Shown here in pieces: positions 9,929 to 12,356 of a stretch of DNA of 64,000 nt. Both the position numbers and the translations under genes were made by a program. The stretch comes from Pocillopora damicornis (taxonomy: Eukaryota): assembly GCF_003704095.1 (NCBI RefSeq), contig NW_020844463.1, forward strand, positions 496,001 through 560,000. Direction: 5' to 3'. Within the stretch, counting starts at the first letter, position 1, and each line of letters begins with the position of its first letter. The notes under the pieces were generated by a model. The model was not told the DNA's origin. It searched no databases and saw nothing but the letters and a program-made list of their open reading frames with translations.

Positions 9929-12356
9929 TTTCATCGCAGATCTAGGGGTGTACACCAGCAATCAAAAGGGTTGAAGGTTAAAGTTGTATCATCTACATTT
10001 CTAGTGGATGGAAACATTGTCGGAATGATGCATTTGGATGTAAGGCAAGTCAACACGGATTTTCAGAACCCGCTTAGAATAAGTATTGAATCGGAAGCCG
10101 GAATTGTATCAGGCCACTTTTTCAACTTCTACAACCATAAGCCAACTTTTAAACTGGACACCAATGACCAGAAATCAATTTCACTCTCTGGTGGGTCGTT
10201 GACAGCGCCATACGTCATGGATCAATTTCATTTCCATGTCTACTGCACAAGGGAAGAGGCTGAGCTCAGTACGCTCGATCGGGTACAAGTACCTGGCGAG
10301 GTAAACGAAAACATTTCAACCAGTTTGTTCCAAACCTCTGAGAGGTCGTGAGCATTTTTAACAGGCATATATTCCTGCTCTGTATCATTTATTTGCAGTT
10401 ACACCTAGTGTTCTTCCGAGAGAAATATCAGTCTTATAACAAGGCTATGCACAAATTTGAAGATGGGCTTGCCGTCATTTCAATTTACTTGGAGGTCGGT
10501 GGTATTTTTCTTAAAATGATTTCTGTATTCCTCTTAAGACTGTGATCTCAAAAGATTGTTGGCTCATTCAAGATGAACTACGTCCGTAAAATATTCTGAG
10601 TTTTCCTTTGGAAACATTTACAGTTACCAGCCAAAATAAAACATGAATTATCTTAACTCCGAATGGAACTTAAGTTGTTGAGAACTTCTTCCTCCTTCTC
10701 CACTCCCCCCCTCCCACACCCAGACACCAAAGTTAGTTGCTCAGGATAAAGGCGCTTCTTTATGCTTCTTCATTTTCGCTCCACGGAGCGAAAACAGCAA
10801 AATTATGTGTTTACGAACATGAGCTCTTGGTGCAAGTTAAAAGCAAAGCCTTTAGGGGAGATTTTCAAAATTCTTATAAACGATAATTTTCCAATTTCCC
10901 AGAAGTGAGTGCAACTTAAGAATTGTCTTATCGGTCCTGGATGGTTTTTTTTTTTGGGAACAACTTCTTTTACCTGATTACCTCAAACCAACGGTAAGCG
11001 CCCTTAGATCTTAGAGAAAAACCAACAGTGACAAGCTTTCTTAGAGGTCATGGAAAACGTAAAGGATTCTATCGATTTCCGTTGATTCTAAATCAAGAAT
11101 GAGTATGTGTAGGAACTCGTTTCTAAATTCAACTCTTCATTTCAACTGGCTTTGTAGGTCGGAGAGGGCTTCAACACCACATACAGCGATCAGATAGCAC
11201 ACTTCTTATCTCATGTGGATTACATTTCACAAAATGAAAGTAAGAATTGTTCTGAAAAAGTCATTGCTAGGTTGGAAACCGTAGTCTAACGTTTGAGAAT
11301 TCCACTTTCCACTGCCCCCACCCTGTAACGAAGGTGTTTATACGTATAACACTATACTTAAGCGAGAGCTAGAGCCTGGGCATGTGCTTGTTCGATATTT
11401 ATGACCAAACTAGGCGTTTAGTTAAGAATACGTTTTTCCTCCTTGTTAGATCACACGGTGCCAACAACTGCGTCAGTCAAACAGTTAGCGGCCCCTGTTT
11501 TAAAGAAGCATGGGCAGTACGATGCGTACCGAGGAAACTTAGTGGAACCTATCCAATGCAGTGATTGTGTGGACGTTCTCGTGATGAAAGAACGATTTAA
11601 ATTGTCCGTTAAACAGGTAAAATACCGGTTAGACAGCAACTTTTTAACGCCTATTTGCTGTGACTGAATTGTTATTGGTAGCTGCGTAGCTCACGGCTAC
11701 GAGCGTTCGATGAAAGCAAAAGGAGCGAGGGGACGAGTAGTAGAGCTCCCTTAAAAACCTTCAGCTCTTTCGGTCCCTTCGAAGTTCAAAGCTATGGAGC
11801 GCACAAATTACTGCAAAGGTTGCTGGGATGCCGGCGTCTAAATATTGTTGTAGATGCCTCCTTGTTACTTTTTTCTAAAAACTTATTAATGGAACAGTGT
11901 TCTCTTATTTTCTACTAGCCTAAGGCAGGGATGCTGGAATTCTTTTACAATTATAAGATCATTCTTTCTCAATAAGTCATTTTTTCTGTTGTCTAAAATA
12001 TTCTCCATAACCAATGATTCACACTCAACGTTTATTCCTAACTGTAGGGTACGAAAGGGAGAGGTCTAGAAACATCAGAACTATTCATGAACAATAAAAA
12101 GGCAAGCTTTGATTTCCACTGAGAAAAGATATATGAAAGCATCTCTGAGAAATACGTACAGAAGGGAATGAAATGTAAACGTTTTCGTGAGAACGACAGT
12201 AAACGGGTACCGTAAGCCGTTAGAGTTTAGCACACTCTAACATACTTTGGTCTTTCACTCGTTTTTATTCCAGTGCTCTTTTCTTCTTCTTTTCTTGACC
12301 AGTTGACTGAATTCAGGAAGGCACCACACTGTAAGGAAAATGACTGGGGGTTTTAA
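9929..12356 (+). CDS. Divergent alpha-carbonic anhydrase-like protein (5' end unresolved)
   Basis: Phase-compatible GT-AG exons ~9929-10300, 10399-10494, 11158-11239, 11450-11616, 12303-12356 (TAA). Motifs LSGGSLTAPYVMDQFHFH, PGELHLVF, DGLAVISIYLEVG, YDAYRGNLVEPIQCSDCVDVLV and SVKQLTEFRK are colinear with alpha-CAs. First in-frame ATG is at 10025; possible upstream exon 9449-9506. Confidence 0.85.

What the first reader, a model, noticed from the sequence alone, without database searches (positions are those of the whole stretch)
9929..12356. Alpha-CA-like protein with all three Zn ligands but both catalytic gatekeepers replaced
Seen: ungapped alignment of HVYCTREEAELSTLDRVQVPGELHLVF to human CAII [27 protein letters not shown] keeps His96, Glu117 and His119 (His94 is kept in QFHFH) but gives E106L and H107S. 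GSLTTPP becomes GNLVEPI (T199V, T200E). The QSPIDI and C-terminal NWRPxQPL motifs are not recognisable. Established: the Thr199-Glu106 network orients Zn-hydroxide for CO2 hydration, and classical acatalytic CARPs instead lose Zn-His ligands. Inference: this is the opposite kind of derivative, a metal-loaded alpha-CA with a remodelled pocket. It could be a metal-binding protein (Glu200 possibly a fourth ligand) or a neofunctionalised enzyme, in an animal where CAs matter for calcification.
Basis: partly seen in the sequence, partly recalled or inferred. Interest (0 to 1): 0.78.

Follow-up and report, generated by a model that had tools for sequence, protein, structure and literature searches.

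The report
Coral SpiCA7-type carbonic-anhydrase-like gene
This is a real, expressed and conserved coral gene for a secreted carbonic-anhydrase-like protein that keeps its zinc-binding histidines but has lost the catalytic Thr199; the family and this oddity were already reported in 2016 (SpiCA7/AmiCA7), and its function is still untested.

Summary
The motif observation is correct; the gene model and the novelty claim are not. RNA contigs from four independent poly-A studies show a spliced gene of seven coding exons plus a 3'UTR exon (ATG 5331, stop 12354-12356).

The 314-aa product is identical to the annotated Pocillopora damicornis protein XP_027038541.1. It is 82% identical to Stylophora "alpha carbonic anhydrase 7" (SpiCA7). 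Le Goff et al. 2016 (PMC4981384) already described SpiCA7/AmiCA7 as scleractinian-specific, secreted and divergent, with three zinc histidines but no gatekeeper residues.

- Q92, H94, H96, E117, H119, V199, E200 and four cysteines are invariant. The His64 equivalent (H128) is kept in 13 of 14.
- The Glu106 position is variable: E in 7, Q in 4, K in 1, and L only in Pocillopora and Stylophora.
- Every member ends at NDWxF, so the last 13-20 residues of the CA domain are missing. The N-terminal CA segment is replaced by a signal peptide and a disordered linker.
- dN/dS is 0.17 for the domain, so this is not a pseudogene.
- Active-site cavity positions are more conserved than the rest of the domain.

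Best reading: a zinc-holding derivative with a remodelled, still-functional cavity that is unlikely to hydrate CO2 efficiently. Its biochemistry is unknown.

The parts
5305..5522 (+). Exon 1: short 5'UTR, ATG at 5331, signal-peptide-like start (MHCAREICFLVIFGHISFFTSA) and the beginning of the Cys/Ser-rich linker. Donor GT at 5523.
   Evidence: The 218-nt loose end of RNA contigs before 9448 ends in letters found only at 5506-5521. The model translation equals the database protein P0019. The 5' limit of about 5305 is inferred from the loose-end length.
9449..9506 (+). Exon 2: the rest of the disordered linker (..SSSSADIRLVEDLM).
   Evidence: RNA contig piece 9448-9506 and joint 9506|10005 (GT..AG) in 4 runs.
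10005..10300 (+). Exon 3: start of the CA-like domain. Holds the degenerate QSPIDI (MHLDV), the His64 equivalent H128 (10136-38), the invariant HKPTFK, Q157-F-H159-F-H161 (Q92/H94/H96), C164, L171 at the Glu106 position, and E182 (E117).
   Evidence: Joints; Pfam exon hit; alignments.
10399..10494 (+). Exon 4: LH184LVFF (H119, V121) and DGLAV (L141, V143).
   Evidence: Joints 10300|10399 and 10494|11158; Pfam profile positions 109-139.
11158..11239 (+). Exon 5: a variable surface helix region (ends in phase 1).
   Evidence: Joints; AF2 helix 225-237.
11450..11616 (+). Exon 6: YRGNLV273E274P loop (T199V, T200E), C278/C281, and V284 (W209V).
   Evidence: Joints 11239|11450 and 11616|12303; alignments.
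12303..12362 (+). Exon 7: LTEFRKAPHC307KENDWGF, stop TAA at 12354-12356, then 6 nt of UTR before a GT donor.
   Evidence: Joint 11616|12303, and a loose end at 12362 that continues with the letters of 12988 onward. Orthologues stop at the same codon.
12988..13500 (+). Exon 8: 3'UTR (3' end approximate).
   Evidence: The loose-end consensus behind 12362 equals window 12988 onward. RNA contigs extend about 515-550 nt beyond 12362.
14258..15011 (+). Degenerate partial tandem copy (exon 5/6/7-like only). It has a 2-nt deletion in the exon-6-like piece, CAG->TAG at its last codon, a lost donor, and a stop at the same NDW(R)F position.
   Evidence: tblastn; DNA alignments A4 and A5.

Best explanation
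Identity (about 0.97 confidence). The locus is the P. damicornis orthologue (XP_027038541.1, pdam_00006950) of the scleractinian-specific secreted alpha-CA derivative known as SpiCA7/AmiCA7. It encodes a signal peptide, a disordered linker of about 75 aa that carries Cys and N-glycosylation sequons, and a trimmed alpha-CA domain equivalent to about CA II residues 28-247.

Mechanism (inferred, about 0.55 confidence). The domain still folds as an alpha-CA and still holds a metal, presumably Zn2+, on H159/H161/H184, supported by Q157 and E182. The catalytic cavity has been rebuilt and is the selected part of the protein:
- Thr199 is fixed as Val, which removes the hydrogen bond that orients the zinc hydroxide.
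- Glu is fixed at position 200, next to the metal-bound solvent.
- Trp209 is Val, and His107 is Ser or Asn.
- New invariant charged residues (K65, K69, D91 equivalents) line the cavity.
- Glu106 has become dispensable.

The protein is therefore expected to be a poor CO2 hydratase at best. It more probably uses the metal-centred cavity for a different reaction or for binding a polar or charged ligand outside the cell. Shown: gene structure, expression, orthology, fold, conservation pattern and purifying selection. Inferred: metal occupancy, loss of efficient CO2 hydration, and that the cavity is the functional site.
For: - Spliced poly-A RNA contigs from 4 studies support all junctions.
- The model is identical to P0019. 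Identity to SpiCA7 (P0022) is 82%.
- Le Goff et al. 2016 describe SpiCA7/AmiCA7 with the same features, and their supplement holds the same sequences.
- Pfam gives 95.4 bits over profile positions 49-229 of 254. PDB CA II/III match at E about 1e-16.
- In the AF2 model, residues 98-314 have block-mean pLDDT of 68-93 (mostly 77-93) and residues 1-97 are below 50. Foldseek matches CA II at E about 1e-16, TM 0.64.
- Family alignment: H94/H96/H119/Q92/E117/V199/E200/P201 are invariant, H64 is kept in 13 of 14, and position 106 is E7 Q4 L2 K1.
- Cavity positions: 17 of 29 are invariant against 51 of 188 elsewhere in the domain (Fisher p 0.001).
- Pairwise dN/dS for the domain is 0.05-0.24. ML omega is 0.17 for the domain and 0.28 for the N-terminus.
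- Tree: the family is monophyletic (100/100) on a stem of 1.52 substitutions per site, with short crown branches. It sits inside the clade of cnidarian secreted CAs that share the Cys99 'FHFGC' motif (98/97).
- Established knowledge (my own, not retrieved): CA II T199A/V lowers kcat/Km about 100-fold, and E106 substitutions lower kcat by up to about 1000-fold. The PDB hit lists contain a CA II entry titled on this conserved hydrogen-bond network (1cva).
Against: - No biochemical data exist for any family member.
- Keeping a His64 equivalent, Q92, V121, V143 and L198 is also what a working CO2 hydratase would keep.
- A T199V-type enzyme could still turn over at CA III-like rates.
- The missing C-terminal strand and N-terminal segment could alter the site in ways a 22-sequence AF2 model does not capture.
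- The alignment around residues 62-70 contains a one-residue indel, so the K65/T67/K69 assignments are approximate.
Confidence: 0.6

Rival explanations
1. It is still a working carbonic anhydrase with an unusual active site. The invariant Glu200 carboxylate (or solvent) replaces the Thr199-Glu106 relay, His128 shuttles protons, and the protein hydrates CO2 extracellularly at a moderate rate.
For: The zinc triad, Q92, E117, the His64 equivalent (13 of 14), V121, V143 and L198 are conserved. Selection is strongly purifying. Glu106 is still present in 7 of 14 members.
Against: Thr199 is Val in all 14 members. W209 is Val and H107 is lost. Glu106 is freely replaced by Q, K or L, which argues that the canonical relay is no longer used. 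The stem branch of 1.52 substitutions per site indicates a functional shift. The authors who first described the family also doubted its activity.
Confidence: 0.25
2. It is functionally a CARP-like, non-catalytic binding or structural protein. Either the metal site is closed by Glu200 as a fourth ligand and serves only stability, or the site is empty.
For: V199 and E200 are invariant. An engineered carboxylate at position 199 in CA II becomes a fourth zinc ligand with very high affinity (my own knowledge, not retrieved). The cavity has new charged residues. The long disordered, Cys-bearing N-terminal linker suits a matrix or partner-binding role.
Against: Conservation of a proton-shuttle His and of the hydrophobic CO2-pocket residues is not needed for a purely structural metal site. 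Nothing shows that residue 200 (rather than 199) can reach the metal.
Confidence: 0.12
3. It is a decaying or truncated pseudogene that is transcribed by chance.
For: The stop lies 6 nt before an exon junction. The C-terminal CA strand is missing. A broken partial copy sits 2 kb downstream.
Against: The same stop position is kept in 7 transcripts from different genera and in all 14 proteins. Omega is 0.17. The ORF is intact in three Pocillopora species, Stylophora, Porites, Oculina, Desmophyllum and Acropora.
Confidence: 0.02

Closest known systems
SpiCA7 (Stylophora pistillata ANJ59767.1 / XP_022801264.1) and AmiCA7 (Acropora millepora JR994744), Le Goff et al. 2016, PLoS One 11:e0160368
   Same: Orthologues. 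Identity to SpiCA7 is 82% and the family is monophyletic at 100/100. All are secreted and scleractinian-only among named sequences. All have three zinc histidines, lack Thr199, carry extra residues upstream of the proton-shuttle His, and end at NDWxF.
   Different: Nothing essential; this is the P. damicornis member. The paper gives one paragraph. It does not report the conserved C-terminal truncation, the fixed Val199-Glu200 pair, the variability of position 106, the selection data or the gene structure.
Canonical alpha-carbonic anhydrases (human CA II/III; cnidarian secreted CAs with the extra Cys99 disulfide)
   Same: Same fold (Foldseek TM 0.64). Same zinc triad, Q92, E117, His64 equivalent, V121, V143 and L198. 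Shares the cnidarian-type Cys after FHxxx (C164) and a Cys near the C-terminus (C307). The positions of the last three coding-exon boundaries match those of the genome's own paralogues.
   Different: T199V, T200E, W209V and H107S/N. Position 106 is L here. The first 28 or so CA-domain residues are replaced and the last 13-20 are absent. Identity is only 13-20% to other coral CAs and 27-36% at the exon level to paralogues in the same genome.
CA-related proteins (CARP VIII, X, XI; cnidarian cytosolic and secreted CARPs)
   Same: Divergent CA-fold proteins that are conserved by selection and have doubtful CO2-hydratase activity.
   Different: CARPs are defined by loss of at least one zinc histidine (often R-H-Q). 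Here all three are invariant and the gatekeeper side is changed instead.
Engineered CA II variants at Thr199/Glu106 (a hydrogen-bond-network entry, 1cva, appears in the PDB hit lists)
   Same: The same positions are altered, so they serve as a laboratory model of what V199 and L106 should do to catalysis.
   Different: Those are single substitutions in an otherwise intact enzyme.

Membership tests
alpha-carbonic anhydrase superfamily (Pfam PF00194) | Sequence match above the curated cut-off | tested here: met
   95.4 bits against a cut-off of 27, E 5.4e-27, but only profile positions 49-229 of 254. Single exons score 14-19 bits each, in colinear order.
alpha-carbonic anhydrase superfamily (Pfam PF00194) | Alpha-CA fold | tested here: met
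   AF2 block-mean pLDDT is 68-93 (mostly 77-93) for residues 98-314. Foldseek top 50 hits are all CA II-derived structures (wild type, mutants, isozyme mimics and chimeras), E about 1e-16, TM 0.64, about 212 columns.
catalytically competent alpha-CA | Three zinc-binding histidines (H94, H96, H119) with second shell Q92 and E117 | tested here: met
   H159, H161, H184, Q157 and E182 are invariant in 14 of 14 members.
catalytically competent alpha-CA | Gatekeeper pair Thr199-Glu106 | tested here: not met
   V273 is present in 14 of 14. Position 106 is L in this protein (family: E7 Q4 L2 K1).
catalytically competent alpha-CA | Proton-shuttle His64 | tested here: met
   H128 aligns to His64 by MAFFT, by hhalign and by the strand-turn-strand register of the model. 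It is kept in 13 of 14. The 'SGH' His121 is not the equivalent.
catalytically competent alpha-CA | Complete domain, including the N-terminal segment and the C-terminal NxRPxQPL..R..SF strand | tested here: not met
   The protein ends at NDWGF, and the same stop is kept in 7 transcripts. The N-terminal 97 residues are disordered and not CA-like.
catalytically competent alpha-CA | CO2 hydration activity and zinc content | not testable with these tools
   Needs recombinant protein.
CARP (acatalytic CA-related proteins) | Loss of one or more of the three zinc histidines | tested here: not met
   All three are kept. Definition as given in PMC4981384.
SpiCA7/AmiCA7 group (Le Goff et al. 2016) | Orthology with SpiCA7/AmiCA7, plus three zinc histidines, no Thr199, and a secreted, scleractinian-only distribution | tested here: met
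   82% identity to SpiCA7. The family clade has 100/100 support. Named members are all scleractinian. The paper's text and its supplementary alignment match.

The most novel reading that the evidence does not exclude
The SpiCA7 family is a scleractinian innovation. A secreted alpha-CA was converted, in one burst of change, into a zinc-centred protein with a new activity or a new ligand. Possibilities are a different hydrolytic substrate, or metal- or carbonate-species binding with Glu200 at the metal. The family has been kept for that role since the origin of stony corals and may be tied to skeleton formation.
Probability: 0.25. Interest if true: 0.6.

Novelty: already known. Interest (0 to 1): 0.33.

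Why it matters
Corals rely on carbonic anhydrases for calcification and for supplying carbon to their symbionts. This family is found only in stony corals among named sequences, is under clear purifying selection, and keeps a metal site while discarding the residue that makes carbonic anhydrases fast. It is therefore a good candidate for a lineage-specific new function. The oddity itself is already published and the gene is already annotated, so the value here lies elsewhere.

Tried and rejected
1. RNA joints put the acceptor at 10005, and the frame open from 9929 is intronic.
2. I first took 'SGH' (H121) for His64. MAFFT, hhalign and the model's secondary structure place His64 at H128 instead.
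3. I asked whether the TAA is a recent nonsense mutation with the old C-terminus still readable downstream. This was rejected: all 7 transcripts stop at the same codon, their downstream sequences are unrelated and not CA-like, and paralogues have no intron at that point.
4. The pseudogene reading was rejected.
5. Genomic loci for the Stylophora orthologue (P0022, P0046) are not on record, so synteny was not tested.
6. Paper searches by accession number or product name found only Le Goff 2016. The scan's own notes have nothing under 'carbonic anhydrase'.
7. The RNA pile at 7495-7528 is a 34-nt palindromic piece with unrelated flanks and is not an exon of this gene.
8. On the joined model: exons were searched by reference only. 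The exons were joined only inside local scripts to translate them, to compare the translation with database proteins and to take the Pdam coding sequence for the codon analyses. Once the database returned an identical protein (P0019), its id was used.
10. A full-length tree with all coral CAs was not built. The tree uses only the first-CA-exon region (108 columns).

Full report
**What is in the sequence**

Reading 9500-12800 and listing ORFs showed open pieces with alpha-CA motifs, flanked by AG and GT. Each piece alone scores below the Pfam cut-off (17.8, 19.0 and 14.5 bits). They match PF00194 in colinear order at profile positions 49-95, 109-139 and 171-216. The genome is 234.35 Mb in 4393 contigs. 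It holds many canonical CA genes with the same late exon boundaries and one intronless CA. The nearest paralogues of the first CA exon are only 27-36% identical.

**Transcript evidence and the true gene model**

Nine runs on record as RNA libraries hold 32-60% of the sampled words of 9929-12356. I laid contigs from four different studies on 7001-13000.

- All four runs show the GT..AG joints 9506|10005, 10300|10399, 10494|11158, 11239|11450 and 11616|12303.
- A loose end before 9448 ends in letters that occur only at 5506-5521.
- A loose end behind 12362 continues with the letters at 12988.

The resulting model is:

- Coding exons: 5331-5522, 9449-9506, 10005-10300, 10399-10494, 11158-11239, 11450-11616 and 12303-12356.
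- Exon 7 runs on to 12362, so the TAA lies 6 nt before the junction.
- A 3'UTR exon starts at 12988.

The model gives 314 aa. These are contigs, so they show presence and splicing, not expression level or strand.

I joined the exons only inside local scripts. Exons were searched by reference.

**Identity**

The exhaustive profile search with exon 3 found only 13 proteins at E 0.001 or better among 1.84 billion representatives. Eleven of them belong to one tight family. A word search with the full-length relative P0005 returned 17 family members and then a sharp drop to ordinary CAs at 27-37% identity.

One member, P0019, is letter-for-letter my model. It is RMX50332.1 / XP_027038541.1, 'carbonic anhydrase 3-like', from Pocillopora damicornis. 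Named relatives are:

- Pocillopora meandrina and P. verrucosa (98-99% identity).
- Stylophora pistillata ANJ59767.1, 'alpha carbonic anhydrase 7' (82%).
- Porites lutea, Desmophyllum pertusum and Oculina patagonica.

All of these are stony corals.

**Prior knowledge**

Le Goff et al. [quoted passage not shown] Their supplement holds the same sequences and reports 13-20% identity to all other cnidarian CAs.

The core of the finding is therefore published. Other paper searches found nothing further on this protein.

**Anatomy of the protein**

The whole protein scores 95.4 bits on PF00194 but covers only profile positions 49-229 of 254. It matches CA III and CA II chains at E about 1e-15 to 1e-16. 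AlphaFold2 on a 22-sequence alignment gives residues 1-97 below pLDDT 50 and residues 98-314 with 10-residue block means of 68-93 (mostly 77-93). Foldseek matches CA II at E about 1e-16, TM 0.64, over about 212 columns.

The architecture is a signal-peptide-like start, a disordered Ser/Cys-rich linker, and a CA domain trimmed at both ends.

Residue equivalents come from MAFFT and hhalign against canonical CAs.

| CA II position | This protein | State in the 14-member family |
|---|---|---|
| Q92, H94, H96, E117, H119 | Q157, H159, H161, E182, H184 | invariant |
| V121, L141 | V186, L206 | invariant |
| V143 | V208 | 12 of 14 |
| L198 | L272 | 13 of 14 (I in one) |
| P201 | P275 | invariant |
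| His64 | H128 (not the 'SGH' His121) | 13 of 14 |
| Thr199 | V273 | Val in 14 of 14 |
| Thr200 | E274 | Glu in 14 of 14 |
| Trp209 | V284 | Val in 14 of 14 |
| His107 | S172 | N8 S5 H1 |
| Glu106 | L171 | E7 Q4 K1 L2 (L only in Pocillopora and Stylophora) |

The most parsimonious ancestral state at position 106 is Glu, lost step by step in the pocilloporid lineage.

Four cysteines are invariant (C164, C278, C281, C307). C164 sits where the genome's nearest paralogues have the cnidarian-specific 'FHFGC' cysteine. C307 sits where those paralogues have the Cys before 'DNIRP'.

**C-terminus**

All 14 proteins end at NDWxF. Seven transcripts from different genera stop at that same codon with TAA or TGA. 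What follows is unrelated between genera. The truncation is an old, fixed feature, not a recent nonsense mutation.

**Selection and history**

| Measure | CA-like domain | N-terminus |
|---|---|---|
| Pairwise NG86 dN/dS | 0.05-0.24 (0.24 at the least saturated pair, dS 0.49) | 0.19-0.75 |
| ML GY omega | 0.17 | 0.28 |

Positions equivalent to the CA II active-site cavity are more often invariant (17 of 29) than the rest of the domain (51 of 188; Fisher p 0.001). They include family-specific replacements: K129, T131, K133, D156, Y195, V273, E274 and V284.

A tree of the first-CA-exon region puts the family as one clade (100/100). The clade sits on a stem of 1.52 substitutions per site and has short crown branches. 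It lies within the clade (98/97) of cnidarian secreted CAs that carry Cys99. This is the pattern of one episode of remodelling followed by long constraint. The tree uses only 108 columns, so the exact sister group is open.

**Interpretation**

The gene is functional.

The invariant first and second zinc shells argue that a metal is still bound. The fixed Val199, the dispensable Glu106, and the loss of W209 and H107 argue that the canonical hydroxide-orienting mechanism is not in use. The retained His64 equivalent and the highly conserved, newly charged cavity argue that the cavity is still the business end.

I commit to 'metal-holding derivative with a remodelled functional cavity and poor CO2 hydration' at about 0.55-0.6. 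The rivals are 'moderately active unusual CA' (about 0.25) and 'non-catalytic CARP-like binder, possibly with Glu200 closing the site' (about 0.12). None of these can be settled without protein chemistry.

**The downstream twin**

At 14258-15011 lie exon 5-, 6- and 7-like pieces only.

- The exon-6-like piece has a 2-nt deletion and a CAG->TAG change at its last codon.
- The exon-7-like piece keeps the stop at the same position (TAG) but has lost the donor.
- By my hand count from the peptides, it resembles a second paralogue type (P0026, intact in some other coral) more than the neighbouring gene: 30/36 (83%) against 26/36 (72%) over the exon-6 peptide. This count is not itself a tool output.

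It therefore looks like the relic of an older duplicate.

**Verdict**

The feature is real and correctly read at the motif level. The 5' end was mis-delimited. The peculiarity is already known. What remains interesting is the untested biochemistry.

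Noticed in passing
window 14258-15011 (+): A partial, broken tandem copy of the 3' half of the gene. By my hand count, its exon-6-like peptide is closer to a second paralogue type (P0026: 30/36, 83%) than to the adjacent gene (26/36, 72%). It looks like the relic of an older duplicate whose 5' exons are gone. No second intact copy exists in this genome.
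   Followed up: partly
window 10254-10255: RNA contigs from all four runs read CG instead of AA (codon GAA->GCG, E167A). This matches the P. meandrina and P. verrucosa proteins and Stylophora. The public RNA probably comes from sister species or other haplotypes, and the reference Glu is the derived state.
   Followed up: partly
window 7495-7528: A 34-nt palindromic piece (cacgtgacc...ggtcacg) lies in abundant RNA contigs whose flanks do not match the window. It is probably a dispersed repeat or MITE fragment carried in other transcripts, not an exon of this gene.
   Followed up: partly
G000 contigs C3622 (208-233 kb), C2888 (38-75 kb), C1129 (161-179 kb), C2744 (445-469 kb), C1035:88442-89191: The genome holds several tandem arrays of canonical secreted CA genes with the cnidarian 'FHFGC' cysteine. 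It also holds one intronless, fully canonical CA ORF (301 aa) on C1035.
   Followed up: no
The possible clustering of skeleton-related genes was not examined.
   Followed up: no
protein P0002: One P0026-type relative carries an internal repeat of the segment EEEMHLDLRSVNVKSEYPLQIHIDKSNGALSG(Y/H)FFNFHNHKP. This could be an assembly artefact or an exon duplication in another coral.
   Followed up: no
window 12354-12362 / 12988: The stop codon lies 6 nt upstream of a spliced 3'UTR intron. The paralogous canonical CAs have no intron there, so the UTR intron is a feature of this family's locus.
   Followed up: partly
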